Positions 6,100 through 56,117 of a DNA stretch of 64,000 bases are shown here, in pieces (position 1 is the stretch's first letter; every line of letters starts with the position of its first letter). Where the stretch lies: the NCBI RefSeq assembly GCF_963921235.1, contig NC_086109.1:12400001-12464000 (forward strand), in the 5' to 3' direction. Source of the stretch: Mobula hypostoma (lineage: Eukaryota). The notes under the pieces are model-generated. The model did no database searches, was not told where the DNA came from, and worked only from the letters and a program-made list of their open reading frames with translations. Made by a program: the position numbers and the translations under genes.

Positions 6100-6136
6100 C
6101 AGGCAGTGAACAGATGAGAAGAATCAGAATCCACAT
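6100..6136 (-). CDS. Leader exon of CD300/MDIR-like gene X (MWILILLICSLP-G)
   Basis: ATG, 12 hydrophobic codons, phase-1 G|gtgagt donor; 37 nt, same as paralogs at 34317 and 51970. Confidence 0.75.
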
Positions 6137-7009
6137 TGTTCTGTTGACAGTGACGGACTGGGCAGCACTTGTCTGTTGCTCAGCTCTTCGCTCTAAGAAC
6201 TAAGTAACAGACTAAACCAAATGGGACATGGAAGTTGAAAGAGAAAAAGAAATCAGGAAGTTCAGTTGTGAAACCACTGTGAGCCAGACGCTAAAAGTGA
6301 ATGCCTTAGAATCTGAGGCACTCTTGGTTAAACTAAACAGATGAATCAAATCAAATTTTAACTATCTGATTGAAATGGTGAAGTATAGTTACTGTCAGTA
6401 AAACAATCTGACTGAGAAGTTAATGGTGACTGTGTCAAAAATACTGCTATCACTTGAGTTGATTATGATGTTCTCCTTATTCCCTTTATGGAGAAACACC
6501 TTTGCACAACTTTGTTTAACATAGGGAGGCTGATACACAGACAAAGTCTTTGCCAGATTGGTGTCAGGGTCCAGTGTTGTGGAACCTTATCTGCTGCAGC
6601 CTTCCTCCATTGTGAAATATCAGCATCTTCTGCCAGCTCCACTGTTGGCTCTTTGTCTGGAAGGGCCCCTTTGACCATACTGCAATTGGTGACCGACCCG
6701 GAACCAAGCTGATGATAACATTGCTCTCGGGATCTCAGGTAATCACAAGCCACTCAGTTGCAATGAGGTTACTATCCTCAGAGAAGGGTAATGTGTCTGT
6801 TCGGAGGGATTTGCTTCAGTCGGCGATACTCCAGAGAGCTTACCTGTGGCTTGCACAAAAATCAAAACATGTTCTGCCTAGCCAGGCTTTCCTGGGTCTT
6901 CTGATTGGGGCAATAATAGGGAGTAGTGCTTTGGTGTCTCCAAGCTCGTTCACAGGCCAGGGCTCTGTGTAGAACGTAAGTATAGTCCGAAACTTAACTG
7001 GGAATTACA

Positions 7010-8646
7010 GTCACAATTACGACAGAGAAAGTACTGAGGAAGCTGAATAGTCTAAGGGTTGATAAATCTCCTGGACCAGATGGAATGCACCCTCGTGTTC
7101 TGAAGGAAGTAGCTGTCGAGATTGCGGAGGCATTAGCGATGATCTTTCAAAAGTCGATAGATCCTGGCATGGTTCTGGAGGATTGGAAGACTGCAAATGT
7201 CATTCTGCTATTTAAGAAGGGGGCAAGGAAGCAAAAAGGAAATTATAGACCTGTTAGCTTGACATCAGTGATTGGGAAGTTGTTGGAGTCGATTGTCAAG
7301 GATGAGGTTACGGAGTACCTGGAGGCATATGACAAGATAGGCAGAACTCAGCATGGATTCCTTAAAGGAAAATCCTGTCTGCCAAACCTATTGCAATTTT
7401 TGGAGGAAATTACAAGTAGGCTAGACAAGGGAGATGCGTTGGATGTTGTATATTTGGATTTTCAGAAAGCCTTTGACAAGGTGCCACACATGAAGCTGCT
7501 TAACAAGATAAGAGCTCATGGAATTACGGGAAAGATACATACATGGATAGGGCGTTGGCTGATTGGCAGGAAACAGAGAGTGGGAATTAAGGGATCCTAT
7601 TCTGGTTGGCTGCCAGTGGTGTTCCACAGGAGTCCGCGTTGGGGCCGCTTCTTTTTACGTTGTACATCAACGATTTGGATTATGGAATAGATGGCTTTGT
7701 GGCTAAGTTTGCTGATGATACAAAGATAGGTGGAGGAGCCGGTAGTGCTGAGGAAACAGAGAGTCTGCAGAGAGACTTGGATAGATTGGAAGAATGGGCA
7801 AAGAAGTGGCAAATGAAATACAATGTTGGAAAGTGTATAGTTATGCACTTTGGCAGAAGAAATAAATGGGCAGACTATTAATTAAATGGGGAGAGAATTC
7901 AAAGTTCTGAGATGCAACGGGACTTGGGAGTCCTCGTACAGGATACCCTTAAGGTTAACCTCCAGGTTGAGTCGGTGGTGAAGAAGGCGAATGCAATGTT
8001 GGCATTCATTTCTAGAGAAATAGAGTATAGGAGCAGGGATGTGATGTTGAGGCTCTATAAGGCGCTGGTGAGACCTCACTTGGAGTACTGTGGGCAGTTT
8101 TGGGCTCCTTATTTAAGAAAGGATGTGCTGACATTGGAGCAGGTACAGAGAAGATTCACTAGAATGCTTCCGGGAATGAGAGGGTTAACATATGAGGAAC
8201 GTTTGTCCGCTCTTGGACTGTATCCCTTGGAGTTTAGAAGAATGAGGGGAGACCTCATAGAAACATTTCGAATGTTGAAAGGCATGGACAGGGTGGATGT
8301 GGCAAAGTTGTTTCCCATGGTGGGGGAGTCTAGTACAAGAGGGCATGACTTAAGGATTGAAGGGTGCTCATTCAGAACAGAGGTGTGAAGAATTTTTTTT
8401 AGCCAGAGGGTGGTGAATTTATGGAAGTTGTTGCCGCGGGTGGCAGTGGAGGCCAAGTCATTGGGTGTATTTAAGGCAGAGATCGATAGGTATCTGATTA
8501 GCCAGGACAGCAAAGGTTATAGTGAGAAGGTGGGGGAGTGGAACTAAATGGGAGAATGGATCAGCTCATGATAAAATGGCAGAGAAGACTCGATGGGCCG
8601 AATGGCCGACTTCTGCACCTTTGTCTTATGGTCTTATGGTCTTATG
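7010..8646 (+). mobile_element. CR1 LINE ORF2 fragment, frameshifted
   Basis: ORFs 7085-7690, 7606-7881, 7912-8388 carry RT motifs; (TTATGGTC)n tail. Confidence 0.9.
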
Positions 8647-10140: not shown

Positions 10141-11751
10141 ATTCTTGTTGGGCGGGATATATCCCTAAATAAAATCAAATCAAAAATAAAAATTGTCCAG
10201 CTGAGAGTGCGCAATGCCTCCTGAGACACTAGATGTTCTGCTAGTGGTTTTGGACACCTCACATTGAAAGGTCCCAATCCAAAACATCAACTTGCTATTT
10301 CTCACTGTAGACACTGTCTGGTCTGCTGAGTTCCTGAAGCAGTTTGTGTGTGGTTCTGGTTGTGGGCAGGGGCCGGGAAAGGAGGAATTTCCCAGAGTGG
10401 GCAGGTCCCTGCAGCAATTGGGACGTCCCACTGGCTGAGCAGATTCAGCAGAGTGGGAAGACTTTGAAGAAATTTACTGAGTGCCTGTGTACAAGAACCA
10501 GCTTTGACAACAATCATGAACTTTACATGAACTCCAACTGTGAGTTCAGGTGTTCGTCCACTGTCAACAAGCCCTGTGCTAACTGCTTCATCTGTGGCTC
10601 TTATTTCCATCTCCTTTGCTTCTGGAAGTAGTTTCATCTGATTCTCAACAGGTCATCTTTTCTGACACAGCCCACAAATCACCAGGATCCCCTCACTTGA
10701 GTATTATCACTCAGTCCTGCTAACATTTTAACACTCTCAACAAATTTCTATCATTTGCTGAAAATTAGATAGATAGATACCTTATTGATTCCAAAGGAAT
10801 CAATCCCAGTGTCACAGTTGCATTACAAGTGCACAGATATAAATATTAAAACAGAAGTAAAATTTAAAAAAAAGTTACCACGAACAGTCTAACAGGAGGG
10901 CTTCATCACTTCCCCAGCTATAGGTTGACTCATTATAGAGCCTAATACCGAGGGTAAGAATGACCTCATATAGTGCACTTTGTGCAGTGCAGTTGTCTTA
11001 GTCTATTACTAAATGTGCTCCTCTGTTCAGCCAGAATGCCATGCAGCATGTACTGTTTTTTGTTTCATGTACTTCACAAACTCAATCATTTGGATGTCTG
11101 ATATCATCAACTGACTCACTGATTTCTAATCTGTCTTCCTTCTGCATAATTCCTCATTTATATTCTAAGGAAACATTTCATTTCAGACAACTATTTAGGC
11201 AATGAAAAGTAAGACCTGGGTGACGGGTGACAGGTCTGCTCTGAACAAAGCTCAGCACTGTGGCGGTCACACTTGGTGACCCTGAGCTCTGCAAGAAATC
11301 GGTTCATGACCTTTATAAAGTAATCGGCAATGCCAAGAGACAAATCCAGTCCATAACTGATTCTCAGACTGGCTGTCAGATGTGGCAGGGTTTAATTGTG
11401 ATAATAGGCTGCAATATGAAGCAGTATGTTTGATCACACCACATTCCTTCCCAATGAACCTTATGCATTCTAAGCATGTTTTCAACAGAAAGAGTGTGGA
11501 ATGTCATCACTTGCCCTGACAGCCTCCAAATGCTCCTGAACCTACAGTCACCATTGCAGACCTCCAGTAAGTCTTGAGACTGAACCCACAGAATGCACCT
11601 GGACCTGCTGGGGGGCCCTGTGGTCAGCATGGAGAGACTGGGCCGAAAGGCCTTTATCCACGCTGTATTACTCTGTAACTCTACGAGATGGTTGTGAGTG
11701 CTGAACTGAGTCACATGGACACTGAACGTATGAGATACAAAAGAACTTTAC

Positions 11752-11819
11752 CCTGCCTCATTGTTTCAAGTGTGGGGAAGATCTGTATAAACAACATTTT
11801 CTTCCAATGTGGTCATTTC
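11752..11819 (-). CDS. Candidate cytoplasmic exon with ITIM (EMTTLEENVVYTDLPHT*)
   Basis: tttatttcag acceptor, VVYTDL fits [ILVS]xYxx[LV], TGA at 11766-11768, GG|gtaaag donor at 11752. Confidence 0.5.
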
Positions 11820-11929
11820 CTGAAATAAAAAAATAAATTTCAAGATCTATTATATGACTGATGAATGTGAAAGGTGAGGGTATGAAAAGTTAAAAACTTT
11901 TATTAGATAATAAACCTGATTAGCCCCAA

Positions 11930-12185: not shown

Positions 12186-13836
12186 AGATTTAGATTAGAT
12201 TAGATTATGAGGACACTCAGTCCTCATTTATTGTCATTTAGAAATGCATGCATTAAAAAAATGATACTGTCACCTTGGGGGGTGTTGATGGTGGACCCAA
12301 ATGCAAGACACAGACACTGAAGTACAAGGAACAGGACTTGACTAGAGCAGGGAGGTGACAGGATACAGTCAAGGAGCAGGGACAAGAACACAGACTTGGG
12401 CTTGGATCCCGAGCCAGAAACTGGACAAGGACCCAGAATCTGGGTCTTGCCTCCGGCTCGGGCCCCAGAACCAGGCATGGACATGACTGCAGGACTGGAG
12501 GCTGGGGTCTTGAGGCTTGGAGACAGGCTTGGGGTCTTGAGGCTGGAGGCTTGGAGACAGGCTTGGGGTCTTGAGGCTTGGAATGCAGAGGCTGATAACT
12601 CGGAGGCTGGAGCTCAGATACAGACTGGGAACTGTACATCAACATGGAGCCAGGACTTATCCTTCGTAAAGCCAGGACTCATCTTCAACACGACACCAAC
12701 ATGAGATAGGACAGTACATAGACACAGAGCTGGGACTTATACTTAGCCAAGCTGGGGCTCAACTTCATCTCCACACCAAGGTGGGACAGGACCATCCGTC
12801 AGGTAATGGCAGAACGGCCAGACTTACCCAACAGAGGCAAAGACAAGACAAGACAAGACAAGTCCCCCCCGCAGGGCAACAGCAGAACGGCCTGACTTAC
12901 CCCACAGAGGTGAGGACAAGACAGATCCCCCCTCAGGGCAACGGCAGAACGGCCTGACTTACCCCACGGAGGCGAGGACAAGAAGAGACAAACACCGAAG
13001 AACAACAGACAGTTCCATCTCTGCATTGGCGATTGAACTAGATGGAGAGTCAGGTGAGGTATCCAGGCAGACAGTCAGACAAGGGGGGAAAAGACAGGGA
13101 GGGGAACAGGACAGTCTAGCAGGAAATCCCTGGTTTGCAGAGGTATTTATGTCTCAGCCCCAAAACGAGAATCACGTGCCTACAACAGAAACTGGGGAAA
13201 ACTAGAAACCCTGGAATAAGGAACTATGGACCGGACCGTGAACTGGAATACGGACTTCACAGACCGGACCATGACAGATACAACATTCCTCCAGAATGAT
13301 ATCACAAGAAAATAGAGGACAAACCAAGACTAAAACTGACAAAACCACATAATTATAACATATAGTTACAACAGTGCAAAGCAATACCATAATTTGATAA
13401 AGAGCAGACCATGGGCACAGTAAAAAAGAGTTTCAATGTCCCGATAGCCCCATCATCTCACGCAGCAGCACCATTGGAAGCACCCAACTGCAGCAGACTC
13501 TGAGTCCATCCGAAAACTTCGAGTCTCCGACTAGCCCCTCCGACACAGCCTCTCCGAGCACCATCCTCTGCCGAGCATTTCAACCTCGTCCCGGCCGCCG
13601 AGCAACAAGCAAAGCCGAGGACTTGGGGCCTTCTCCTCCGGAGATTCTGGACCACACAGTAGCAGCAGCAGCGAAGCGGGCATTTCAGAAGTTTCACCAG
13701 ATGTTCCTCCGTGCTCTCACGTCCGTCTCCATCAAATCAGAATTGCACACGGCACCCTACTTGACAAATAACAGACATCACCACCGCAGTGGCTGCTGTG
13801 AGCTGCGTCGCGTCGCCATCTTCTCCTCCCACATGT
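12186..13836 (-). mobile_element. Non-autonomous retroelement with (AATCT)n tail, interrupted by a solo LTR
   Basis: Same family as 46155-46780 and 50228-50905; plus-strand start tagattagattatgaggacac, end gccatcttctcctcc. Confidence 0.75.
12268..13276 (-). mobile_element. Solo LTR with 5-bp TSD (GATAC)
   Basis: TGTCA...TGACA termini; gatac at 12263-12267 and 13277-13281; empty site visible in paralog at ~50296; internal tandem repeats. Confidence 0.9.
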
Positions 13837-14431: not shown

Positions 14432-14749
14432 CCGTGCTGTTGACTTCAATCACATTTCTGCAGGGGCTGACACTGTTGGAGATGGATACATTAAGTACTT
14501 CACTGGACTTCTCTTCATTAGCATTTGAGGCTTTGCAATAATAAAGATAATTTTTGTATTTTAAGGATTGACAATGTAGATCCAGTTTATTGGTATCAGA
14601 GATCATTGAATCCACAGATGGGGTCTTTTCATACCATGAGTACTGAATGGGAAGGGATCCATGGACAGACTCACAGGACACTGACACGGAGTCCGCACAA
14701 CTTGAGCCATTTGGTGGTGAAAATCGAAGCAAAGGAACAGACACGGGTT
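14432..14749 (-). CDS. C2-type Ig exon of gene A
   Basis: cttttccacag acceptor, G|gtaagt donor, phase 1/1, 318 nt open; VSVSCES..GSLPIQYSWY...YYCKASN. Confidence 0.9.
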
Positions 14750-15239: not shown

Positions 15240-15870
15240 AACCAGAAAACCATAGACCATAAGGCCTAAGACACAGGAACAGAATTAGGCCATTCAATCT
15301 GCTCCATCGTGGCTGATTTATAATCCCTCTTAATTAATCTATTCTTCTGCCTTCTCTCTGCAACCTTTGATGCCCTTACTAAGCAAAAGCCTATCAACCT
15401 CTGTCTTAAATAAACCCAATGATTTGACCTCCAGAGCTGCCTTTAACAAAAAATTCCACAGATTCACCAGCATCTGGCCAAACAAATTTCTCCTCATCTT
15501 TCTTTCAAAGGGATGTCCTACTATTCTGAAACTGTGCCTTCTGGGCTAGACATCTAGCAAGTACAGGCCCAGAGCCTTCAAACACTTCTCATATGTTGGA
15601 GCAGTTTGACTTCACTTGGAATTTAATAGCCAGATCCCTTTAGAATTGATATACAGAGATTTCTTGGGGTACAAGTCCATTGTTCCATGAGGATGGCAAC
15701 ACAAGTGGATATAATGGTAATGAAAGCATTCAGCACGCCTGGCTTCTTCATTCTACATGTTGGAGACTAAAGCTGACAAGTTATTTTGTAGCTTCATGAA
15801 ACTTTGGTTAGGGCTCATTGGGAACATAAAATGCATTTCTGGTTGTAACCTTATGGAAAGGATGTGGAGC
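15240..15870. mobile_element. CR1 remnants (minus ~15240-15590; plus ~15600-15870)
   Basis: CR1 3' end in reverse, then a TLVRAHWEH..GKDVE-like plus-strand piece paralogous to 44540-44790. Confidence 0.75.
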
Positions 15871-16183
15871 TCAGATACTTGTAGATGCACGTCAAACTCT
15901 GGAAGATTGCCAGATGTTGTAATTCCACATCTGTAAAGTCCTGTATCATTAGAGACAAGATTCTCCATAGTAACAGTAAATATTCCCTGGGATGTGTTAT
16001 CTCTGATTGCCACTCTTCCATACTGCTCATTTGTCCCAATTGTATTCACTAACGATGTGCATTGACGATCCCACATGCGGCACAAATACTTTGTGTGTGA
16101 ACGGTACATTGGTGCATAGTGACAATCGATTGTGATCGCTCTTCCCACAGCTCCTCTTACTTCATCTTCTGCCCATAAAGCAC
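15753..16183 (-). CDS. V-set Ig exon of gene A (CD300/pIgR/TREM-like); donor lost, reads into antisense CR1 to a TAG
   Basis: tttcag acceptor; VRGAVGRAITIDCHY..KYLC..QC..IFTVTMENLVSNDTGLYRCG; four Cys; homology to V-B ends at 15871. Confidence 0.9.
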
Positions 16184-16693
16184 CTGAAACTGAGGGAGAA
16201 ATTTTTCAGAAAATACACAGGTAAAATCAAATCAACACAGGGAGATTCAAGATTCAAGATTGTTTAATGTCATTTCCTGTACAAAAGTGTAGAGGAGAGT
16301 GAAATCATTGTTACTCGATTCAATGCAGCACCAAAAAAAATACGAAAGATAAAGAACATAATAATAATAAAAGAAGATGCTTTATTTAAAGTTGTGTTCC
16401 CCAGTGGCAGTGTGCCCTTGTCTATTGGTACAATTGAAGTCCATATAGACTGAGAAGACAACAGCATCGTCCCTCATCATGTGCTCACAACTCTTCACAA
16501 GTAATGACTTTTATTTGATTGGAGTCATCCTTGTCACTGCCCACTAATGATTCAGCTGGAGGCAATTGTGCAAGACATGATCTACCTGAATTTGCAAAGG
16601 CAAGATCTGATTGAGATAGTCAACATAATTTTGAGCATGGGAAATCCTCTCTCAAAAGAATTTGACTGACTTTTTTTGAAGAGATGACCGCAG

Positions 16694-17517: not shown

Positions 17518-19696
17518 GCAGGAACTGATGAGAACGGGGCAGTAGCGTTTAGCACATGAGTTTAGCAAGGCTTATGGCAAGATCTTGTATAGTAGATTGA
17601 TCTGCAATGTGAGATCTCATGGTAAGCTAGCTGGATAGATACTGAATAGGCTTGGTGGAAGGAGTCAGACTGTGGTAGTGGAGTGTTGGTTTTCTGACAA
17701 CATCTGACTTTACCACCAGTGGTGTGCCATCGGGATTGGTGCTGTTATTTGTTAACCACTGTCATTTGTCATCAATATTAATAATTTGGAATGAAAATGT
17801 AGGTGGTATAAGTAATAAGCTACGCGTATCACTGTAGTGTGGTGGACAGTGGAAAGAGTTGTCTAAGTTTACAAAGGGACCTGGAAAATGAACCAGCGTT
17901 CAGCTGCATTACTCTGTGTCAGCAAGATCCCCCCACCCTGAGCCTGTTCCATAGACCTGCGTCTGACCCATCTCCCTCTCTCCTTGGTACTACCTTCAGG
18001 CGGAAGGTGCAGGAGCCTTGGGGCCCATGCTGCAGAGTTCATCAACAGTTGATGCCCTGCAACTATCGCGCTCCTGGATTGGTTTCACTCACCTCAGCAC
18101 AGAGCTGACTCTGAAACTGTGGACTCACTTTCGGGGACTCCGTGACTCATGCTATATGTACTACTTGTTTACATCTTTTTAATTATTTGCACGATTCATC
18201 CTATTTTGCGTGTTGATGTTTGTCAGACTTTGTTGTGTGTGGCTTGTCGTGGGTTCTATTGTTTCTTTGTTTTGTGGGTATCTGCAAGAAGATGAATCTT
18301 GAGGTTGTTTATGGAACACATACTTTGATAATAAATTTACTTTGAACTTTCAACTAGGAAAGTGGTCAGTGGAACGACTGATGGAATTGAACTCAGGCAG
18401 TGTGAAGTGATGCATTTTAGGAAATTAAACAAAGGCACAACTTAAAGATGTTGACCAGACCTCACCTTGACTACCCTGTGCAGTACTGTAGACCTGATGT
18501 TCCCTCTTATCAGCCTCCAGGGGATTTCTCCAGCTGGACATATTCTCCCCCCACCTGGCTCCACACTAGCCCCCTTTCCTCCTGATCTGTTTCCACCTCT
18601 CACCCATCTCCAAAATCCACCCCATTTTCTCCCCATTCCATTTGCCTGTCGTGCTTCAACTCCCCACCCCCTAGTCCCCGACCACCTAGTGCATCCAGTT
18701 TCACACCTCCCTCTCTCCTGTTCACACTATCTCCCTCTCCACTCACTATTGATGCAGGGTCTCAATTGAAATGTTGACATTTCCCCTCCTCCCGTCCGTT
18801 TAACTGAACAATGTTAATTGTTCACTCTTAATTTCATTGTAAGCGCAACCATTCTGCAGATACTAAAGATCCAAAGCAACACGGAAAACTGCTAGAGGAA
18901 CTCAACAGGTCAGACGGCATCTATGATAATGAATAGGTTGTCGATGTTTCTGGCCAACACCCTTTTTCAGGACTGAGAAGGAAGTGGGAAATTGTTGGAA
19001 TAAAAAGATGGAAGAGGGGACGGTGGCTATCTGGAAGGTGATCGGTGAAGCCAGGTGGGTGGGAAAAGTCAAGGACTGTAAAGAAAGAATCTGATAGGAG
19101 AGTAGAGTGGACCATAGAAGAAAGGAAAGGAGGAGGGGCCCAAGGGGGAGTAGCAGGCGGCTGAGAATGGTTTCTGCCTGAAACCTCGACTATCTATTCA
19201 TTTCCATAGATGCTGCCTGACCTGCTGAGGTCCTCCAGCATCTTCTGTGTGTTGCTCTTCATTTCATTGTAGTGTGAGTTTGAGGTGATCCAAGAAGGTA
19301 GCTAAATTATATTTTCCCGCATTTTTGTTTCTGGCTTTGCAATTGTTCATAAAAACTTAATTTCACATTGTATATAAATAGTTAAATGATAAAATAATTC
19401 AAGATACATGGAGAGCTTTTGTTACTTTGGGTTTGTTACATTTGCTTTAGGGAGAAACAGTGCAGTATATTTGCCGCGAATGTGTATCTGCTTAAATTCT
19501 GTACATTGTATAGTATGAGAGCTGACTCTATTGCATCAGTCACTGCTGTCATCTGTGTAATGTTCAACCTTAGTGAAGGATGTGGTCAGAACTTCTGTTT
19601 TCTTTGATTGTCTCTCCAGAGAGAATATAGAGAAGTAACAACAGATGCTACACATTGACAGATTGTTCTGGTCTCTTCCTGCATTGCCCATCACTT

Positions 19697-20408
19697 GGCA
19701 GGATACTTGGTGTGGAGGAGCAGAGGGATCTGGGGGTACATGTCCACAGATCCCTGAAAGTTGCCTCACAGGTAGATAGGGTAGTTAAGAAAGCTTATGG
19801 GGTGTTAGCTTTCATAAGTCAAGGGATAGAGTTTAAGAGTCACAAGGTAATGATGCAGTTCTATAAAACTCTGGTTAAGCCACACTTGGAGTACTGTGTC
19901 CAGTTCTGGTTGCCTCACTATAGGAAGGATGTGGAAGCATTGGAAAGGGTACAGAGGAGATTTACCAGGATGCTGCCTGGTTTAAAGAGTATGCATTATG
20001 ATTAGAGATTAAGGGAGCTAGGGCTTTACTCTTTGGAGAGAAGGAGGATGAGAGGAGACATGATAGAGGTGTACAAGATAATAAGAGGAATAGATAGAGT
20101 GGATAGCCAGTGCCTCTTCCCCAGGGCATCACTGCTCAATACAAGGGGACATGGCTTTAAGGTAAGGGGTGGGAAGTTCCAGGGGGATATTAGAGGAAGG
20201 TTTTTTACTCAGAGAGTGGTTGGTACGTGGAATGCACTGCCTGAGTCACTGGTGGAGGCAAATACACTAGTAAAATTTAAGAGACTACTAGAAGGTCTAT
20301 GGAGGAATTTAAGGTGGGGGGTATATGGGAGGGAGGGTTTGAGGGTGAGCACAACATTATGGGCCGAAGGGCCTGTAATGTGCTGTACCATTCTATGTTC
20401 TACGCTCT
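19697..20408 (+). mobile_element. Young CR1 3' fragment, same subfamily as 874-3069
   Basis: Near-identical sequence to ~2344-3060; atcactt duplicated at both flanks; empty site in paralog at ~24356. Confidence 0.9.
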
Positions 20409-20426
20409 ATCACTTCTTGAAAACTT

Positions 20427-21045
20427 CTCAACAACTATGGTTCAATAAGCTGATGAGAACAAGTGCAGAGATACTTACTTTCTTTTTCAAAATTTTTATT
20501 GATGTTATATAAATTACATGAATACAAATACAAAATTCATAATGATACGAGGAAATAATCCAGATTACATTACATTTAAATCACAGTAATATGATCACAA
20601 TATCCTATATTCCAAATGAATCATGTATAAAAAAGGATTGAATTATGAAATGAAATAGAATAAAATAATTGTATTTTATTAAAAAAAATCTACCCCTACT
20701 ACCGAAATGAGCTGGTTGGTAAAATAAAGAAGAAAAAAGAAGCTTACCTTACCATATAATATTACAATAATAATGGCTCAGATCCATACTTTAATAACAG
20801 TTCAAAAATTGTGAAAATAATTCAGAAAGGGTCCGCATAACATTAGAATATCATGTTTAGAATCAGAAATCGGGAACAACGAATCTTCCCTAGATCGAGG
20901 CACAACATAACGTCAGATAGCCATTGAACATGAGTGGGCGGGCCGGCCTCCTTCCACTTGAGCTAGAGCAGAGATACAAAGCACTTTCAGCAAAGCATTT
21001 CTGTTTCAGCAACTAGAACAGTGACAACAGTAACAATTTGGTGAA
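20427..21045 (-). pseudogene. Disrupted Lys-TM exon copy (RNALLKVLCISA[L1]LVLISLLNHSC*)
   Basis: Paralog of 56008-56117; acceptor AG absent; L1 inserted mid-TM. Confidence 0.65.
20475..20967 (-). mobile_element. 5'-truncated L1 with 10-bp TSD (GCAGAGATAC)
   Basis: LKWKEAGPPTHVQWLSDVMLCLDLGKIR ORF2 C-terminus; TSD at 20465-20474 and 20968-20977. Confidence 0.85.
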
Positions 21046-23389
21046 GAAAGGTGAAAAGGCCATTTAACCATTGTGTTTAAACCTAATCCCAATCCTGTGC
21101 ATAACCGTAAATACAACAGTGAGATTGTAAAGTGCTTTCCATTCAGTTGTTGGGAAGTTATCCAAGAACCGCAGCTCTATAAGATGGGATATTGGTCAGA
21201 CTGCACTTGGAATATGGCGAACAGTTTTGAGCCCCTTATCTATGAAAGGATGTGCTGTATTTGGAGAGGGTCCAGAGGAGTTTCCTGAGAATGATCTCAG
21301 AAATGAAACAGTTAATGTGTGAAGAATGTTTGATGGCTATGGGCCTGTACTCACTGGAGTTTAGAAGAACGTTGGTGGGGGTGGGGTAGCGATTCTCATT
21401 GAATTCCTCTTGAATAGTGAAGGGCCTAGAACCTAGATGGGGTATACGTGGAGAGAATGTTTCCTATCGTGGGCAAGTCTCTGACCAGATGGTGCTAATT
21501 CCATGGAATTCATTGTCACAGATGGCTGTGGAGGCCGAGTTATAGGGTATATTTAAAGCAGAGGTTGATTGTTTTTTTGATTAGTGAAGGTGTCAAAGGT
21601 TATGGGGAGAATGGGCTTGAGGGGAAAAGTTAATGAGCCATTGTAGAATGATGAAACAGACTCAAGGGGCTGAGTGGCCTAATTCTGCCCTATGATTCAT
21701 TGCTTTATGGTTTGAATTACTTAGGCAATGAAGGAAGAGGATGGAAAAGTTCATTTACATGAGGCGTTCATTTATTCTGTTTTGTCAGACAAGTAAAAAG
21801 CACTGAAGTTCTAACCATATCCTTTGAGAATTGCTTTGGGACAGGGAAAGGTTCTCTATCAGAATCACAACCAGGTTTAATTTCACTGTCTTCTGATGTG
21901 AAATTTGTTGTCTTGCAGCAGAAAAATCGAAGCAAGTTCTTGCCCTCAGACCATTAATGAGCTCAGGTTCAACAGGCCTAGGTTCACAAGTGGCACCACT
22001 GCATCTGGAATTATCTGCAGCTAATCAAATCCCATCAGATAACCTGACCTGAAGGGGTCAAGAGCTCCAAACAGTCTCTGGTGTTACTGCTTCACATCCT
22101 CACAGAGCAGGTGAAGATTATTATGTGATATTCCACGTTGTCAGTGGGGCATTTCAAGGTTCATTTCTCCCAGTACACAGGAGTCTTGCATAGTAGACTG
22201 GTGGTCCCATTCCATTCCGCAGTCTAAAGACAAACTGGGTACGTTAATTGATCTTTGTACATTGTCCTGTGATTAGAATATGGTTAATCAGGTTTGTCGA
22301 GGGTTGCTGGGCCGGGAAGTCCTACTGTGCACTCTTTTGGTAAAAAAAATAAAGGGATGACCTTGCATTCTGAGGCTGATTGTTCATGCAAGATTTCCCC
22401 ATGAGGAAACTATATTTTATCGTATACATCAAAGTATCCCAAATTCTTGTTCTTCATAATGGGCTCCAACATATTTCCAACCACTGAAGTCATACTAACC
22501 AGTTTACAATTTCCTTTTATTGCCTCCCTCCTTTCTTAAAGGGAGGAGTGACATTTCCAATTTTCCAGTCCTCTGGAACATTCCAGATTCTAGTTATTCT
22601 TGAAAGGTCACCACTAATGCCTCCACAATTTCTTTACTACCCCTTTCAGAACTTGGTGTGCAGTCTGTCTGGTCCAAGTGACTTATCTATATTCAGACCT
22701 CTCAAATTCTCAAGTACCTTCTCCTTATTAATAGCAACCATGCTCACTTCCGTCCCCTGACATTGCTAAATTTCTGTCATTCCCACTAATATTTACTATA
22801 TTATACGGCCTTCTTTTTGTTTTATGAAAAAACAACCCCATTTTGACATGAAATGGTTTGTGCATGCAGACAACCCCCGTAGTTTCTAGTCCTTATAGAA
22901 TCAGAGAGCACAGTGAATAGACAAATCACACTTGTCCAAGGAGAAGACATTCTTCTCTTACCTATCTCACCCACGTGGTTGCCGTGACATTTGACACTGC
23001 ATACCTTTGCTCAGATTCTCAGTTGCTAACTTCCCAGTTTCCCTGTTCACCTGGTTAGATCTTTCAATGTTAGTCAAAGTGTGATCCATCCAGATTCATG
23101 CTGTGTGATTCACTGGGGCAGATGAAGTCTGAGGAGAGCTTCAGTACAAGGGATAACAGCTCTCATGTGTCAGACATATTGGAGAAGTAATACAGAATCA
23201 GAAACACAATCAGGTTTAATGTCACCAGCACACTGTATACCGTGAAATTAGCTATTGCAGTCATAATCAGGAAAATTCGATGATTACTATAGGAGCTGTA
23301 TGCAGAACCAGGTAGGTCAGAAGAGTTAAAAGAAAGCACTTGGCCCAAAGACCCGTGTGGTTTCTGGGTCCTTTAAAAGAATAGAACCA

Positions 23390-25570: not shown

Positions 25571-26276
25571 CTTGTCAGTTCAAACTTCAAAATTCAAATT
25601 ATATTTAATATCAAAATGCATATATGTAACAATATACTACCCTGATTATAATTGCAAAACTATAGTTCACCTTCTCTCATTTTCGAGACCCTTTATTGTA
25701 CATTCATGGGTTACGGTCACAAATCAGTACTGAGAAAAGTTACACCTTCTATTTGCAGATTCACACCCTGACGACCAATGCAAGCTCACTCAATGTCATC
25801 TGCAGTTCACTCATTTTATTCAGCATTCAACTTTTATTTCCATTGCCTGTTCTCATTTAAGACCTTTGTGCAGTGACTGGAAAATTTCATGCTACTGTAA
25901 TTCTGAAATTCTGAAAAGTTGAGAGGAATCAGAATCAGGGTTATTATCACCGGCATGTGATGTGAAATTTGATAACTTAGCAGCAGCAGCTCAATGCAAT
26001 ACATAATCTAGCAGAGAGAGAGAAAAAAATAAGTAAAATAGAATGTAATAATAAATAAACAAGTAAATCAATTAGATATATTGAATAGATTATTAAAAAA
26101 TGTGCAACAACAGAAATACTGTATATTAAAAAAAGTGAGGTAGTGTCCAAAGCTTCAAAGTCCATTCAGGAATTGGATGGCAGAGGGGAAGAAGCTGTTC
26201 CTGAATCGGTGTGTGTGTGCCTTCAGGCTTCTGTACCTCCTACCTGATGGCAAAAGTGAGAAAAGGGCATGCCTTG

Positions 26277-29639: not shown

Positions 29640-30200
29640 ATCAGCATGTAGGAGGAAAATTAAAAATCTGGCTGAATGGTGTCACAACAACTATCTCTCA
29701 CTCAACATCAGCAAAACCAAAGAGCTGATTATTGTCTACAGGAGAAGGTATCCAAAGGTCCATGAGCCAGTCCTCATCAGGGTATCAGAGATGGAAGGAG
29801 TCAGTAACTTTAAATTCCTTGGCATTATCATTTTAGAAAATCTATCCTGTGTCCAGCACAAAGAAAGCACAGCAGCACATTATTTATTCGGAAGTTTGTA
29901 AAGATCAAAATGTCATCTAGAATTTTTAAAAAGTACAACAGATCCTCAGTGGAGAGTATCCTGACTGGCTGCTTCAAGGCATGGTATAAAAACACCAATG
30001 CCCTTGAAAGGAAAAACTTACAAAAGGTCGTGAATCTAGCCCTGTCCATCACAGGTAAACCTCTCCTCACCGCTGAAAGCATTGTTGCACAAAAACAGCA
30101 TCCATCATCCAGGCCTTGTGCTCTTCTTGCTATTGCCGGCTGGAAGCAAGTACAGGAGCCTTAATTCCTACATCACCAGGTTCAGAAACAGATTTTACCC
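29640..30200 (+). mobile_element. Rex1/Babar-like LINE fragment
   Basis: WCHNNYLSLNISKTKELII, FKFLGI, VESILTGC..AWY motifs. Confidence 0.75.
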
Positions 30201-31450: not shown

Positions 31451-31640
31451 TGCAACATTTCCTTCCTGTCTATGTAGCCCGTTTGTTTCCACTAAAACTG
31501 AATATTGGTGACCAATATTCCATAGCACCAATACATTGTATGTGACTGGTTTACTGTTGCATAGGGGAATTTGATTGTGATCACTTTTCCAACAACTCCT
31601 CTTACCCCATCTCTCCATCTCCACAACTCCATGTCTCTCT
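31451..31640 (-). pseudogene. Degenerate, 3'-truncated V-set exon of gene C
   Basis: GVRGVVGKVITIKFPYATVNQSHTMYWCYG aligns to V-A/V-B; B-strand Cys lost, frameshift, second half missing. Confidence 0.75.
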
Positions 31641-34316: not shown

Positions 34317-34353
34317 CAGGTAGGAAACTAATCAGAAGAATCGAAATCCACAT
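34317..34353 (-). CDS. Leader exon of gene C (MWISILLISFLP-G)
   Basis: ATG, hydrophobic 12-mer, G|gtgagt donor, 37 nt. Confidence 0.8.
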
Positions 34354-40565: not shown

Positions 40566-41262
40566 CTGTTGACAACAAAGGGAAGTCCAGGAGCCTGAAT
40601 GTGATCTATTCCCCATGAATGCATTTCAGTTCGAAACACAACCCGTTTTTGATAATATCAGTTTATGAAGAAGCATCTTAATTGATTATCATTCATCGGT
40701 TATGAGAATAAACAACATCTGCAGGCAATTGAATCCATAGAATGAGTTTAACAGTGTATAAGGGTATTAATCAGTTCACAGAAACAGTATGTACGGGTTA
40801 AAATACTTGCTGGGTGATGAAGGAAACATTGGGAAAACTGCTGTTATATTGATATCAATGAGGGTAAAATGTTGGAGAAGGAATTTCAAAAAATCAAAGT
40901 CACTGCCTTGAAGGATGACAGTGGGCAGAAGAATGAAAGTTTGATCTTGATGCAAAATTGAAGCACAGTCAGTGTAATCTGGGAGACTTCACGTTACCTC
41001 CTGGACCACCGTGCTGTGAGGATCAGATTCATCACGTCTCTGGAAAAGGCAATGGTCAACCCATCAGGTTCTTCGACAATGGGATCTCTGCTTTATTTCA
41101 GATGGCCACTCACAATGGAATTTTGTCTGAAACAAGCATTCCATACATTCACATCAAGCATTCTGCACACAAGAGAGCATGTCAAAGCCGAGTTGTATCA
41201 TCTGCATAAAGCTTGGTTTGACCATAGGATAAGAAAGTATTCATGTATTTAAATGTTTTTCT

Positions 41263-41404
41263 TCAAATGAACAGTATATTTGCAAGCAATTTATCTGACA
41301 TCCATAAGCCTATCTTAGTTTCGCTTGTAAACCATGAGACTGAACTCGTGCCGATCATCAGGAGAGCGAAGAGCAGCCAACGGCCCACCTTCCATATCAT
41401 GAAA
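41263..41404 (-). CDS. Transmembrane exon of gene B, Arg type (FMIWKVGRWLLFALLMIGTSSVSWF...)
   Basis: ctcttccattttgctcag acceptor, phase 2; open 47 codons to TGA; W-x-V-x-R-W-L-L-F hydrophobic helix. Confidence 0.8.
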
Positions 41405-42030: not shown

Positions 42031-42189
42031 CTGGAAATGAAGCAGAGATCCCATTGTCGAGGAATCTGATGGGTTGACCATTTCCTTTTGCAGAGACGTG
42101 ATGAATCTGATCCTCAGAGCCTGGTTGCCGAGGAGACAAAGTAAATACTCCCAGATTATACTGACTATATTAGCATTTTGCATCAAAAA

Positions 42190-46154: not shown

Positions 46155-46780
46155 AGACTTTATTTTTAGATTATGAGGACATGCAGTCATCTTTTATTGC
46201 CATTTAGTAATGCATGCATTAAGAAATAATACAATATTCCTCCGGAGTGATATCACAGATACACAGGACAGACCAAGACTGAAAAACTGACAAAAACCAC
46301 ATAATTATAACATATAGTTACAACAGTCCAAGCAGTACCGTAACTTGACGAAGAACAGGCCATTAGCACAGTAAAAAGTTCAAAGTCTCTCGGAAGTCCC
46401 ACATCTCACGCAGACGGGAGAAGGAAGAAAACTCTCCCTGCCATATCCGACCACAGTCCGACTCTGAGGTGTCCGAAAACTTCGAGCTCCGACCGGCCCT
46501 CCAGCACCGAGCACCATCTCTGCCAAACACTTCGACCCCGGCCCCGGCTGCCAGCAGCAGGCAAAGCCGAGGATTTTGTGGCCTTCCCTCCGGAGATTCT
46601 AGATCGCACGGTAGCAGCGGCAGCAAACCGGGCATTTCAGAAGTTACTCCAGATGTTCCTCTGTGCTCTCGTGGCTGAGTCCATCAAATCAGAATTGTTC
46701 ACGGCCCCTAGTTAACAATAACATATCACTTCACCGGAGAGGCTACGCGTGCTGCGACGCGCCGCCATCCTCTCCTTACC
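46155..46780 (-). mobile_element. (AATCT)n-tailed non-autonomous retroelement
   Basis: Homologous to 12186-13836 and 50228-50905. Confidence 0.75.
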
Positions 46781-47264: not shown

Positions 47265-47584
47265 CGTCAGATACTTGTAGATGCACATCACACACTGGAT
47301 GATTGCCAGATGTTGTAATTCCACACCTGTAAACTGCTGTATCATTAGAGACAAGGTTCTCCATAGTAACAGTAAATATTTGCTAGGATGTGTTACCTCT
47401 CACTGTCATTCTTCCATACTGCTCAGTTGTCCATCTGTATTCACTAACGATGTGCATTGACGACCCCACATGCGGCGCAAATACTTTGTGTGTGAACGGT
47501 ACATTGGTGCATAGTGACAATCGATTGTGATCACTCTTCCCACAACTCCTCTTACTTTATCATCTGGCCATAAAGCACCCAGAA
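47265..47584 (-). pseudogene. V-set exon of gene B, frameshifted
   Basis: Close paralog of V-A; 1-nt deletion near 47430 then TGA; KYLC changed to KYLR; acceptor tttcag changed to ttctgg; donor GAC G|gtaggt intact. Confidence 0.9.
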
Positions 47585-50227: not shown

Positions 50228-50905
50228 TTAGATTTTAGATTATGAGGACACTCAGTCCTGGTTTATTTTCATTTAGAAATGCATGCGTTAAGAAATGATA
50301 CAATGTTCCTCCAGAGTGATATCACAAAAACAAGACAAATCAAAGACTAACTCTGACAAGACCACATAATTATAACCTATAGTTACAGCAGTGCAGAACA
50401 ATACCATATTTTGATAAAGAGCAGACCATGGGAACGGTTAAAAAAAAGTCTCAAAGTTACGATCAACTTCCGATAGTCCCGATAGCAGGCGGCAAAAGGG
50501 AGAATCTCTCCCTGCCATAAACCTCCAGGCGCCAACAACTGCCGATGCATTGGAAGCACCCGACCACAGCCGACTCTGAGTCCGTCCGAAAACTTCGAGC
50601 CTCCCACCAGCCCCTCCGATACAGCCTCCCGAGCACCATCCTCTGCCGAGCGCCTTAAACCCGCCCCGGCCGCCGAGCAACAAGCAAAGCCGAGGATTCG
50701 GAGCCTTCTCCTCTGGAGATTCTGGATCACACAGTAGCAGCGGCAACGAAGCAGGCATTTCAGAAGTTTCTCCAGATTTGACTGCGTGCTCTCACGTCTG
50801 TCTCCATCAAATCAGGATTGTGCATAGCACCCTACTTGACAGATAACAGATATCATTCACCGGAGTGGCCGCTGTGCGCTGCGTCGTGCCGCCATCGTCT
50901 CCTCC
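50228..50905 (-). mobile_element. (AATCT)n-tailed non-autonomous retroelement
   Basis: Homologous to 12186-13836 and 46155-46780. Confidence 0.75.
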
Positions 50906-51969
50906 CAAAATTTATTTGGGATTTGTGTGTATGTTTCGGATTCTGGGGAACTCCGGGGTTGAGTCGGGGGTTGGTAGGATCATTTGAGGTTATGTTTCAA
51001 TTCTCTCCATGATGCCAACGCCCTGAAATCCTCCTCATGTACAGACAAGTTTATAAACTGCAGAAAGAAACCCCTCATGATGTCTGAAACTGTGCCCTCT
51101 GGTTATGATGGAAATTTTATATTTTGTACCTGACCAGTATTTCTATGTGTAGTTAGAAAGTGGTGCAACAGTAGTCATTACCACTTTAGTATCTAGAAAT
51201 CCAGGTGTGACTTCAGTTTCTGTAAAGATACATTGAGAGTTTAAATCCAATGAATTATTTATGTCTGGAATACAAAAATCACATATCAATAATGATAAAG
51301 TTCAACTACTGGAATGTCAAAATCCCATTTGGATCGGAAAAGCATTTCAGGACAGAAATCTCTCCTCCCCACCCACCCTGGTTTACCTTTGACTCCGGAT
51401 CTAGTAATGTTCTTTACTAATTGCCCCGCTGAAATGGCCCAGGGAAGACACTGCTGTCAACACAATAATGCCGATTGTTGTAGTGATTCCTGCAGATTCC
51501 ACCAATGGTAGACCCGATGTTCCGGCTTAACAGCCTGCAGGAAATTTCTCCAGCTGGACATTTTCTCCCCCCACCCCCCCACCTTTCTACACACTATTCC
51601 CCTTTTCTCCTTATCTGCTTTCACTTCTCACTCACGTCCAAACCCCACCCCTTAACATTTGACTGTCGTGCTTCACCCCTCCTCAGTCCCCAACCACCTA
51701 GTGGACCCAGTCTCACGCCTCCCTCTCTTCTGTTTACACCCTCTCCCTCTCCACTCACACTTGAAGCAGAGTCTCGACCCAAACCATTAATATTTCCTCT
51801 CCATCTGACAGATGCTGCTTGATCCGTTGAATTCCTCCAGGATTGTACTCTGAACTCCAGTTTCTGACATCTTTAGTGTCTACAGATATTCAAGTACTGT
51901 TCTGAAAATGGTGTCTGACCCCCAAACCAACACTGATTATGGAAGTACCCAGTGCAGCTTGTTACTCAC

Positions 51970-52006
51970 CGGATAGAAAACCAGTCAGAAGAATCGAAGA
52001 CCACAT
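51970..52006 (-). CDS. Leader exon of gene B (MWSSILLTGFLS-G)
   Basis: ATG, G|gtgagt donor, 37 nt, paralogous to 6100 and 34317. Confidence 0.8.
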
Positions 52007-53917: not shown

Positions 53918-54668
53918 GTCATTGTCATAGTCATACTTTATTGATCCGGGGGAAATTGGTTTTTGTTACAGTTGCTCCATAAATAATAATAGAACCATAA
54001 ATAGTTAAATAGTAATATGTAAATTATGCCAGTAAATTATGAAATAAGTCCAGGACCAGCCTATTGGCTCAGGGTGTCTGACCCTCCAAGGGAGGAGTTG
54101 TAAAGTTTGATGGCCACAGGCAGGAATGACTTCCTATGACGCTCTGTGTTGCATCTCGGTGGAATGAGTCTCTGGCTGAATGTACTCCTGTGCCCACCCA
54201 GTACATTATGTAGTGGATGGGAGACATTGACCAAGATGGGATGCAACTTAGACAGCATCCTCTTTTCAGACACCACCGTGAGAGAGTCCAGTTCCATCCC
54301 AACAACATCACTGGCCTTACAAATGAGTTTGTTGATTCTGTTGCTGTCTGCCACCCTCAGCCTGCTGCCCCAGCACACAAAAGCAAACATGATAGCACTG
54401 GCCACCACAGACTCGTAGAACATCCTCAGCATCATCCGGCAGATGTTAAAGGACCTCAGTCTTCACAGGAAATAGAGACGGTTCTGACTCTTCTTGTAGA
54501 CAGCCTCAGTGTTCTTTGACCAGTCCAGTTTATTGTCAATTCGTATACCCAGGTATTTGTAAACCTCCACCATGTCCACACTGACCCCCCTGGATGGAAA
54601 CAGGGATCACCGGTACCTTAGCTCTCCTCAGGTCTACCACCAGCTCCTTAGGCTTTTTCACATTAAGC
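53918..54668 (-). mobile_element. Rex1/Babar-like LINE 3' fragment
   Basis: MFYESVVASAIMFA.VCWG..RINKLI.KA..SFLPVAIKLYN. Confidence 0.85.
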
Positions 54669-56007
54669 TGGAAGGTCTTGGCCTGAAAAGTCAACTGTTT
54701 ACTCTATTCCATAGATTCTGCCTGGTCTAATAAGTTCTTCTAGCTTTTGTGTGCGTGTTGTGATATTTCCATCAAACCTGTTTCTGGGAACTTGCTACTG
54801 AGGAGGGAGCAAAGTAGGAGGTAAGTGTAGAGGCTTTTCATGCAAACTCAGCATACATGCTTGGCCTCATTCCATCTCTCTGAAGGCTGATTCCGCTCTT
54901 TGAAGGAACCTTGAAAGCTCACCTCTTCTGAGAATTATTCCACTGTTGAGGCAATTTCAAGAGCTTTGACGGGATTTCACTTTGCTTCAGTTAGATGCCA
55001 GGGGAAAAGCTACTGAATGGGATTACACAGTCACGATGGGTAAAATCCATGTCAGGTGTGTTCTGAAACAATCAACATTTTGACAGGAAATGGTCTATGT
55101 GAGTAGACAACCCCAGCTATTTCTATTTCTCAATGAATCATAGGGTACAGTAAATGAACAGTTCACACTTGTCCAAGGTGAAGACATTTCTATCTGACCT
55201 ATCTCACCCCCACGGTTGCTCTGACCCTTGACCATACCTTAGCTCATCTTCCCCATTGCTAGTTTCCCAATATACCTGTGATCGTGGTTAGATCTTGCAA
55301 AGTTAGTCGAAGTCTGATTCATGCTGTGTAATTCCCTGGGGTAGATGAGGTCTGAGGAGAGCTTCAGTACAAGGGATAACAATTCTTACGTGTCACACGT
55401 ATTGGAGAAGTAACACAGAATCAGGTCTCTATCATCGACATACTGTATGAGATTTGAATTAGCTTCAGGGCTCCAAAACCTCAACTATCTATTAATTTCC
55501 GTAGAAGCTGCCCAACCTGCTGAGTTTCTCCAGCATTTTGTGTGTGTTGTTTTGATTTCATTGTAGTGCGAGGGTTGAGGTGATCCAAGAATGTGGCTGA
55601 TTTATATTGTCCTGGATTTTAGTTGCTGACTTTGCAATTGTTTATAAGCACTTAATTTCACATTGTATATAAATACAAATGTAGGTAAATGATAAAATAA
55701 TTCAGTATACACAGAGAGCTTTTGTTACTTTGGGTTTGTTAAATTTGTTTTAGGGGAAAACAGTGCAGTATATTAGCCGTGAATGTACATCTGCTAAAAT
55801 TTTGTACATTGTGTAGTATAAGTGTTGTATCTATTGCATCAATCATTGCTGGCTTCCGTGTAAAGTTCACCCTCAGCGAAGGATGTGGTTTGAACTTCTC
55901 TTTTCTTGTTTTACTAAACAGAATATAGAGAAGTACCAATGGATGCTACACATTGACCTATTGTTCTAATCTCTTCCTACATTGCCCAATGCTTCTTGGA
56001 AAACTTC

Positions 56008-56117
56008 TCAATAACCATGGTGCAATATGCTGATGAGAACAAGTACAGAGATGCAAAACATCTTCAGCAAAACCTTTTTTGTTTCACCAACCAGATCGCT
56101 GAACGTCAATAACAATT
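56008..56117 (-). CDS. Lys-type TM/short-tail exon of upstream gene D (ELLLTFSDLVGETKKVLLKMFCISVLVLISILHHGY*)
   Basis: cttttcacttttcttcacag acceptor, phase 1, open 36 codons; stop at the same position in two paralogs. Confidence 0.6.

What the first reader, a model, noticed from the sequence alone, without database searches (positions are those of the whole stretch)
6100..56117. Tandem paired-receptor-like cluster (CD300/MDIR type) with three signalling modules
Seen: three leader exons, three four-Cys-type V exons (one degenerate), a C2 exon, an Arg-TM exon, a Lys-TM short-tail exon and an ITIM exon, all on the minus strand. Known: CD300/TREM/pIgR V domains have a second C-C' disulfide; charged TM residues pair with ITAM adaptors (DAP12, FcR-gamma); ITIMs recruit SHP phosphatases; skate MDIRs mix V and C2 modules. 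Inferred: an elasmobranch activating/inhibitory receptor family undergoing birth-and-death evolution.
Basis: partly seen in the sequence, partly recalled or inferred. Interest (0 to 1): 0.75.

Follow-up and report, generated by a model that had tools for sequence, protein, structure and literature searches.

The report
Decayed ray immune-receptor gene relics
This stretch of devil-ray DNA holds real but broken leftover exons of a known shark and ray immune-receptor family (MDIR, or CD300/pIgR-like), so it is an ordinary gene graveyard inside a larger receptor cluster, not a set of working paired receptors.

Summary
On the minus strand I mapped three leader exons, three CD300/pIgR-type V exons, one FCRL-like C2 exon, one Arg-TM exon with its short tail exon, and one ITIM exon. 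They belong to the chondrichthyan MDIR / "CMRF35-like / pIgR-like" family: skate MDIR2 and MDIR5 are hits, and the V-A model matches CD300lf at TM 0.93.

No intact gene can be assembled from them:
- V-B has a 1-nt deletion, a TAG stop and a Cys-to-Arg change.
- V-C is truncated and frameshifted.
- V-A has an open frame and four Cys, but a deletion removed its splice donor.
- The Arg-TM exon's donor reads AT, not GT.
- The ITIM exon has a TGA three codons after VVYTDL.
- Stalk, uncharged-TM and distal tail exons are absent.

The "Lys-TM short-tail exon" (56011-56117) is a chance ORF in a dispersed repeat.

The window is almost certainly Mobula hypostoma. Only 59668-59760, the last exon of the neighbouring gene, matches RefSeq proteins of that species exactly. 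The scan has noted the same cluster before on nearby DNA of this genome.

Verdict: pseudogene relics of tandem duplicates in a known family. This fits birth-and-death evolution but is of low novelty.

The parts
51970..52006 (-). Leader exon B (MWSSILLTGFLS, phase-1 GTGAGT donor), intact
   Evidence: tblastn E 5e-5 to P0007; DNA; 78% nt identity to the leader C region
47265..47584 (-). V-B: V2-type V pseudo-exon. It has a 1-nt deletion in a G run (within 47422-47441), a CAG-to-TAG stop (within 47377-47393) and a C-strand Cys-to-Arg change (within 47469-47486). Acceptor and GT donor are kept.
   Evidence: 90.9% nt identity to V-A
41314..41404 (-). Arg-TM exon (FMIWKVGRWLLFALLMIG...ETK). The acceptor is fine; the donor reads AAG|ATAGGC, so GT has become AT.
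   Evidence: tblastn E 3e-11 to P0038 and 84% identity to P0081; DNA; family TM motif
40989..41039 (-). Short cytoplasmic tail exon (RRDESDPHSTVVQEVT, then stop), intact
   Evidence: matches the tails of P0025 and P0031
42091..42189 (+). Inverted duplicate of the tail exon (relic)
   Evidence: blastn 40947-41099 against 42186-42034 at 84%; tblastn; regex
34317..34353 (-). Leader exon C (MWISILLISFLP), intact
31452..31638 (-). V-C: relic of a V1-type (KYWC) V exon. The first Cys is Phe, there is a frameshift near 31520, and the D-G strand half is missing.
   Evidence: tblastn E 2e-9 to P0033, split into two frames; DNA
15869..16189 (-). V-A: V2-type V exon with an open frame, four Cys and a good acceptor. 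The phase-1 GT donor has been replaced by CTCCAC through a deletion relative to copy B.
   Evidence: Pfam V-set 2.8e-11; PDB pIgR and CD300f hits; AlphaFold pLDDT 92 and TM 0.93 to CD300lf; donor loss; 85% aa identity to M. hypostoma P0091 V2
14432..14749 (-). C2 exon of the membrane-proximal, FCRL-like type; open frame, both splice sites intact, phase 1-1
   Evidence: tblastn 89% identity to P0044, E 1e-58; PDB FCRL5 hit, E 2e-26; DNA
11753..11819 (-). ITIM exon (EMTTLEENVVYTDLPHT, then TGA, then NNEA). Both splice sites are kept, but an in-exon stop follows the ITIM by three codons.
   Evidence: tblastn 65-70% identity to the ITIM exons of P0037, P0068, P0073 and P0091; DNA
6100..6136 (-). 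Leader exon D (MWILILLICSLP), intact. No Ig exon lies downstream of it inside the window.
56011..56117 (-).

Best explanation
The window is a decaying stretch of the devil-ray (Mobula, most likely M. hypostoma) MDIR / CD300-pIgR-like receptor cluster.

Intact family members are type-I membrane proteins. They are built from exchangeable phase-1 Ig exons: a CD300/pIgR-type V domain and an FCRL-type C2 domain. These are followed by one of two signalling ends:
- a stalk, then a TM with a conserved WxVGRW arginine and a 15-25-residue tail. By analogy with CD300b/c/e, TREM and NKp44, I infer that this pairs with a DAP12- or FcRgamma-type adaptor.
- an uncharged TM (LLCYLKRKN) and a tail with one to four ITIM-like motifs. 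I infer that this recruits SHP phosphatases.

In this window, tandem segmental duplication produced at least two units.
- Unit B: leader B, V-B, Arg-TM, tail.
- Unit A: leader C, V-C, V-A, C2, ITIM exon.
- A third leader (D) follows.

These units were then disabled by point mutations (nonsense, Cys loss, donor G to A), a 1-nt deletion, larger deletions (the V-A donor, half of V-C, and the stalk, uncharged-TM and distal tail exons) and many LINE and hAT insertions.

Shown: the exons, their family, the lesions and the duplication. Inferred: non-expression, and the signalling partners of intact relatives.
For: Family:
- Best hits are batoid CMRF35-like and pIgR-like proteins and skate MDIR2 and MDIR5.
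- V-A and V-B fall in a subclade of seven stingray and devil-ray 'KYLCRMW' V2-type domains with SH-aLRT 100, inside a chondrichthyan clade separate from mammalian CD300.
- PDB and fold matches to CD300lf, pIgR D1, CD300a/c, TREM2 and NKp44. The C2 exon matches FCRL5.

Lesions:
- V-B frameshift, TAG and Cys-to-Arg.
- V-A donor deleted; the only nearby GT is in phase 2 and gives a stop after about 26 codons in C2.
- TM donor reads AT.
- TGA inside the ITIM exon.
- V-C is split and truncated.
- V exons end in phase 1 while the TM exon starts in phase 2, so a stalk exon is needed. None was found.
- No stalk, uncharged TM or further ITIM exon at 6-14.4 kb.
- Both conceptual splicings hit stops.

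Duplication: 15.5-22 kb matches 44.5-57 kb at 78-88%. The V exon is 90.9% identical against 84.3% for the adjacent intron. dN/dS between V-A and V-B is about 1.5, from 24 non-synonymous and 5 synonymous changes.

Annotation: M. hypostoma RefSeq proteins match exactly only at 59668-59760. V-A, C2, TM and ITIM reach at most 85% identity to M. hypostoma proteins. No row in the three family searches was flagged as window-encoded.
Against: - V-A and C2 still have open frames, and C2 keeps both splice sites. The three leaders are also intact. So some exons could still be transcribed or spliced into an isoform.
- No RNA data were available.
- Proteins longer than 550 aa, and loci annotated as pseudogenes, could not be checked.
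- The V-B indel lies in a G run and could be an assembly error, although the stop and the Cys loss would remain.
- Leader D may start an intact gene that continues beyond the window start.
- dN/dS rests on only 29 changes.
Confidence: 0.8

Rival explanations
1. At least one working product still comes from these exons. One candidate is a secreted single-V protein: leader C spliced to V-A, reading through into the intron to the stop at 15756. Another is leader C spliced to C2 alone. A third is a gene starting at leader D and continuing beyond the window.
For: - The V-A frame is open for 150 codons with all four Cys and a good acceptor.
- The V-A model is confident, pLDDT 92.
- C2 is intact with both splice sites.
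- Short, apparently TM-less family members are annotated in relatives, for example P0006 at 169 aa.
- The three leaders are intact.
Against: - Leader C to V-A would need an 18-kb intron full of LINE and hAT elements, and it would have to skip V-C.
- Leader C spliced to C2 and then the ITIM exon goes out of frame and lacks a TM.
- No M. hypostoma protein among the hits of the three family searches (82-550 aa) matches these exons exactly.
- The V-A donor is lost, so a membrane form is impossible.
Confidence: 0.13
2. The lesions are assembly or sequencing artefacts, and the window really holds intact paired activating and inhibitory genes.
For: The V-B frameshift is a GGG-to-GG length change, a typical homopolymer error.
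Against: - The other lesions are substitutions or large structural differences: TAG, TGC to CGC, donor G to A, TGA, a deletion of about 2.5 kb at the V-A donor, a half-missing V-C, and missing stalk and TM exons.
- The window has no N runs.
- Independent lesions in five different exons are not plausible as errors.
Confidence: 0.04
3. The exons belong to an unrelated Ig family or are chance ORFs.
For: Only the Lys-TM ORF behaves this way.
Against: E-values from 1e-60 to 1e-4 against family proteins, conserved splice phases, the fold match and the tree placement.
Confidence: 0.01

Closest known systems
Modular domain immune-type receptors (MDIR) of the clearnose skate, and the RefSeq 'CMRF35-like molecule' / 'polymeric immunoglobulin receptor-like' / 'Fc receptor-like' gene models of rays and sharks (Cannon et al. 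2006, cited in PMC3031540)
   Same: - Same V type (CD300/pIgR/TREM-like, two disulfides) and same C2 type.
- Same modular phase-1 exons.
- Same two signalling classes: Arg-TM with a short tail, or uncharged TM with ITIMs.
- MDIR2 and MDIR5 are direct hits.
- M. hypostoma P0091 and M. birostris P0081 are intact paralogues, 77-85% identical to V-A, C2 and TM.
   Different: The copies in this window are broken: none has an open, spliceable frame. Their V2-type 'KYLCRMW' domain belongs to a stingray and devil-ray subclade in which no skate or shark sequence fell.
Mammalian CD300 (CMRF35/CLM) family
   Same: V fold and extra C-C' disulfide (TM 0.92-0.93 and 35-36% identity to CD300lf). Same logic of activating members with a charged TM and inhibitory members with ITIMs.
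   Different: - CD300 proteins have a single V and no C2 domain.
- The ray V domains form their own clade apart from the mammalian ones.
- The charged-TM motif WxVGRW is specific to this lineage.
- Orthology is not shown.
Polymeric Ig receptor (pIgR)
   Same: V-A gives its best PDB sequence score to pIgR (summed over D1-D5), with the four Cys aligned to D1.
   Different: pIgR is a chain of V-type domains with a long sorting tail. Here V domains alternate with FCRL-like C2 domains, and the tails are short or carry ITIMs. No evidence of Ig binding.
Pseudogene-rich paired-receptor clusters evolving by birth and death (for example KIR/LILR, Ly49, teleost NITR/NILT)
   Same: Tandem duplicates, orphan exons, nonsense, frameshift and splice lesions, TE-filled introns, and lineage-specific expansions in the tree.
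   Different: A different Ig family and a different host lineage. The comparison rests on general knowledge and was not tested here.

Membership tests
MDIR / chondrichthyan CD300-pIgR-like receptors | V domain of CD300/pIgR/TREM type with the canonical B-F disulfide plus a C-C' disulfide | tested here: met
   V-A has four Cys that align with pIgR D1 and CD300f. Its model has pLDDT 92 and TM 0.93 to CD300lf. V-B keeps only three Cys. V-C lost the first Cys.
MDIR / chondrichthyan CD300-pIgR-like receptors | Sequence kinship with skate MDIR proteins | tested here: met
   MDIR2 (P0048) and MDIR5 (P0088) are retrieved with relatives of the window exons at E 1e-81 and 1e-157. The window V domains sit inside the chondrichthyan clade that includes MDIR2.
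MDIR / chondrichthyan CD300-pIgR-like receptors | Modular mix of V and C2 exons with compatible splice phases | tested here: met
   The V and C2 exons are phase 1-1 (321 and 318 nt) and the leaders end in phase 1. C2 is of FCRL type.
MDIR / chondrichthyan CD300-pIgR-like receptors | Signalling end: charged TM with a short tail, or uncharged TM with ITIMs | tested here: inconclusive
   The Arg-TM and tail exons are present but the donor is mutated. One ITIM exon is present but carries a stop. No uncharged TM, stalk or distal tail exon was found.
MDIR / chondrichthyan CD300-pIgR-like receptors | Intact, expressible gene (functional member) | tested here: not met
   Both conceptual splicings contain stops. 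The V-A donor is deleted. No identical RefSeq protein was found. Expression itself was not testable.
Mammalian CD300 family (orthologue) | Single V ectodomain without C2, and orthology to the CD300 locus | tested here: not met
   Family members carry C2 domains. The ray V domains form a clade separate from the mammalian CD300-like outgroups. Synteny could not be tested.
pIgR | Tandem V-type domains only, with binding of polymeric Ig | tested here: not met
   The architecture alternates V with FCRL-like C2. Ligand binding cannot be tested with these tools.
Paired activating/inhibitory receptors | Near-identical ectodomains joined to opposite signalling modules | tested here: inconclusive
   V-A (near the ITIM exon) and V-B (near the Arg-TM exon) are 91% identical in nucleotides and 81% in residues. 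Both units are broken, and exon linkage in transcripts is unknown.

The most novel reading that the evidence does not exclude
The relic exons are not inert. One possibility is that V-A, the only V exon with an open frame and all four Cys, serves as a sequence donor for gene conversion into the working V2-type exons of neighbouring receptors. A hint is that synonymous divergence between V-A and V-B (0.07) is lower than intron divergence (about 0.17). The other possibility is that V-A is expressed from leader C as a secreted single-V decoy.
Probability: 0.07. Interest if true: 0.45.

Novelty: new member of a known kind. Interest (0 to 1): 0.15.

Why it matters
The finding mostly matters as annotation. 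It shows that part of the devil-ray MDIR / CD300-like cluster is a graveyard of orphan and broken exons. Exon counts from raw sequence therefore overstate the number of working activating and inhibitory receptors.

It gives a concrete example of birth-and-death turnover in a cartilaginous-fish innate receptor family: a duplicated V exon pair 91% identical, one beside an Arg-TM exon and the other beside an ITIM relic.

It also illustrates that rays carry receptors joining CD300/pIgR-like V domains to FCRL-like C2 domains. An older survey (PMC4016189) reported no pIgR or FcRL homologues in sharks.

None of this opens a new question: the family and its logic are already described.

Tried and rejected
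- The Lys-TM exon (56011-56117) was rejected. It is repeat-derived, its frame and acceptor are not conserved in the two sister copies I aligned, and it has no family homology.
- I searched 6-14.4 kb and 41.3-47.3 kb for stalk, uncharged-TM and further ITIM or tail exons. I used loose tblastn (word size 2, E up to 1000, PAM30) and regexes. Only noise came back.
- I searched for a fourth leader upstream of V-A. There is none, and copy A lacks the segment that holds leader B in copy B.
- I looked for an in-frame alternative donor for V-A. The read-through has no phase-1 GT, and the AAG|GTTACA site is in phase 2, which gives a stop in C2 (and reasoning).
- The look-up of encoding contigs for P0004 returned no DNA, and P0016 was not on record. 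I could therefore make no syntenic DNA comparison with other rays.
- The cluster look-up showed that all the Mobula proteins I asked about are singletons.
- The MDIR primary paper and review (PMC3701310, PMC2823954) are not held. MDIR features are cited second-hand from PMC3031540.
- Genome contigs and metagenome contigs were not used. The former holds only bacterial and archaeal genomes, and neither was expected to hold ray DNA.
Full report
**What is in the window.** The window has no N runs. It is dense with transposon remains: LINE reverse transcriptases, a broken hAT transposase and a Tc5/pogo fragment.

I collected 104 family proteins through three protein searches and ran them against the window with tblastn. 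This maps a set of Ig-receptor exons, all on the minus strand. I read their borders in the DNA. In 5' to 3' order of that strand:

| Exon | Coordinates |
|---|---|
| leader B | 51970-52006 |
| V-B | 47265-47584 |
| Arg-TM exon | 41314-41404 |
| tail exon | 40989-41039 |
| leader C | 34317-34353 |
| V-C | about 31452-31638 |
| V-A | 15869-16189 |
| C2 | 14432-14749 |
| ITIM exon | 11753-11819 |
| leader D | 6100-6136 |

An inverted copy of the tail exon lies at 42091-42189 on the plus strand.

**Family.**
- V-A reaches the Pfam V-set threshold.
- By sequence it hits pIgR, CD300f/CLM-1, CD300a/c, FcmuR, TIM, TREM2 and NKp44 in the PDB. Its four cysteines align to those of pIgR D1.
- A model built on a 40-sequence alignment has pLDDT 91.9. 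It superposes on CD300lf at TM 0.92-0.93 and on pIgR D1 at about 0.85.
- The C2 exon hits the Ig domains of human FCRL5 (E 2e-26).
- The closest proteins are RefSeq models from rays and sharks named CMRF35-like, pIgR-like or Fc receptor-like. Skate 'modular domain immune-type receptor' 2 and 5 are also hits. MDIRs are described as a multigene activating/inhibitory family with CD300/TREM/pIgR-like V domains (PMC3031540, citing Cannon et al. 2006).
- In a tree of 83 V domains, V-A and V-B sit in a group of seven stingray and devil-ray 'KYLCRMW' V2-type domains with SH-aLRT 100. That group lies inside a chondrichthyan clade separate from four mammalian CD300-like outgroups.
- Across 80 family proteins the membrane anchors fall into two classes: a WxVGRW arginine TM with a short tail, and an uncharged LLCYLKRKN TM with ITIM-bearing tails. 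No lysine-TM class was seen.

**Integrity of each exon.**
- The three leaders are intact.
- V-B has three lesions relative to V-A. A 1-nt deletion in a G run leads to a TGA in the original frame. A CAG has become TAG. The C-strand cysteine TGC has become CGC.
- V-C matches family V domains in two different frames. Phe replaces its first Cys, and it lacks the whole D-G half.
- V-A is open and complete. Where V-B and all relatives have G|GTAGGT, V-A reads C|TCCACA. The alignment shows that copy A continues there with sequence that in copy B lies 2.5 kb further on, so a deletion removed the donor. The read-through has no phase-1 GT. The one plausible GT (AAG|GTTACA) is in phase 2 and would put C2 out of frame.
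- C2 is intact with both splice sites.
- The Arg-TM exon has a good acceptor, but AAG|ATAGGC replaces the GT donor.
- V exons end in phase 1 and the TM exon begins in phase 2. A stalk exon is therefore required, and none is detectable.
- The ITIM exon keeps both splice sites and the motif VVYTDL. A TGA follows three codons later, where relatives continue into further tyrosine motifs.
- No stalk, uncharged TM or distal tail exon lies between 6 and 14.4 kb.
- Conceptual splicing of leader B, V-B, TM and tail runs into stops. So does leader C, V-A, C2 and ITIM.

**The Lys-TM exon.** It lies in a dispersed repeat with further copies at 24361-24539, 20969-21099 and 20413-20472. In the two copies I aligned across this stretch (24.4 kb and 21.0 kb), an indel breaks that frame and the acceptor AG is absent. 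It resembles no family TM, and it sits upstream of leader B. I reject it.

**Origin.** A self-comparison shows that 15.5-22 kb and 44.5-57 kb are segmental copies at 78-88% identity. The leader regions are also related.
- The V exon pair is 90.9% identical, against 84.3% for the adjacent intron.
- There are 24 non-synonymous and 5 synonymous differences, giving dN/dS of about 1.5 on small numbers.
- Unit A looks like the remnant of a multi-Ig gene of the L-V1-C2-V2-C2' kind, as in M. birostris P0081, with an ITIM exon relic behind it.
- Unit B looks like a short L-V2-TM(Arg)-tail gene.

**Species and annotation.** The peptide encoded at 59668-59760 is 31/31 identical to the C-terminus of two Mobula hypostoma RefSeq isoforms, P0016 (XP_062921369.1) and P0085. 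Their other exons are not in the window.
- This agrees with an earlier scan note of an eight-exon receptor gene just beyond the window's end.
- Other notes place further parts of the same cluster 29 kb and 184 kb before the window. So the scan has found this cluster before on nearby DNA.
- No M. hypostoma protein among the family hits returned by the three searches (82-550 aa) is identical to V-A, C2, TM or the ITIM exon. The best, P0091, an intact inhibitory paralogue, is 85% identical to V-A.
- No hit was flagged as window-encoded.

**Mechanism.** By analogy with CD300, TREM and NKp44, intact relatives should signal in one of two ways. One is through an acidic-TM adaptor paired with the TM arginine. 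The other is through SHP phosphatases recruited to the ITIMs. This is inference from established receptor biology and is not shown here. For the window itself, the best-supported reading (about 0.8) is that nothing functional is encoded. The exons are relics of duplicated receptors that were disabled by point mutation, deletion and transposon insertion.

**Rivals.**
- A residual secreted or partial product, or a gene starting at leader D and continuing outside the window: about 0.13.
- Assembly error: about 0.04.
- Unrelated family or chance: about 0.01.

**Novelty.** The finding is a known family in a species whose intact members are already in RefSeq. It adds unannotated pseudogene relics, so interest is low.

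Noticed in passing
window 59668-59760 (-): This is the terminal coding exon of the neighbouring upstream receptor gene. It is 31/31 aa identical to the C-terminus of M. hypostoma XP_062921369.1 (P0016) and P0085. The exon is itself repeat-derived, with copies at 25576-25892 and 30592-30775. It identifies the genome as Mobula hypostoma.
   Followed up: partly
window 14432-14749 (-) and 15869-16189 (-): The family joins a CD300/pIgR-type V domain to an FCRL5-like C2 domain (PDB 9loc, E 2e-26). A 2014 survey (PMC4016189) reported no pIgR or FcRL homologues in sharks, so these ray receptors bear on that claim.
   Followed up: partly
window 818-2995 (+) and 19696-20402 (+): LINE with a 489-aa RT-bearing ORF followed by a 232-aa ORF. 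A 93%-identical fragment lies 17 kb away, which suggests fairly recent LINE activity inside the receptor cluster.
   Followed up: no
window 26960-28729 (-): hAT-family transposase (DUF4371 plus the hAT dimerisation domain) split into three overlapping ORFs. It sits in the 15-kb gap between V-C and V-A.
   Followed up: no
window 60637-61071 (-): Tc5/pogo-type transposase DNA-binding fragment (HTH_Tnp_Tc5, CENP-B_N).
   Followed up: no
window 10267-10604 (-), 26164-26277 (-), 30082-30231 (+), 33735-33908 (+): Repeat or TE sequences here match the N- or C-terminal ends of RefSeq receptor models of relatives (Hypanus P0039 N-terminus, M. birostris P0019 C-terminus). Those gene models apparently include TE-derived terminal exons.
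   Followed up: no
window 13278-13827, 46229-46776, 50297-50907 (same orientation); 12411-12925 against 43959-43442 (inverted): Unclassified dispersed repeats at 77-88% identity flank the Ig exons in both units. They carry long spurious ORFs (Pro/Gln-rich or Cys-rich) that could be mistaken for exons.
   Followed up: no
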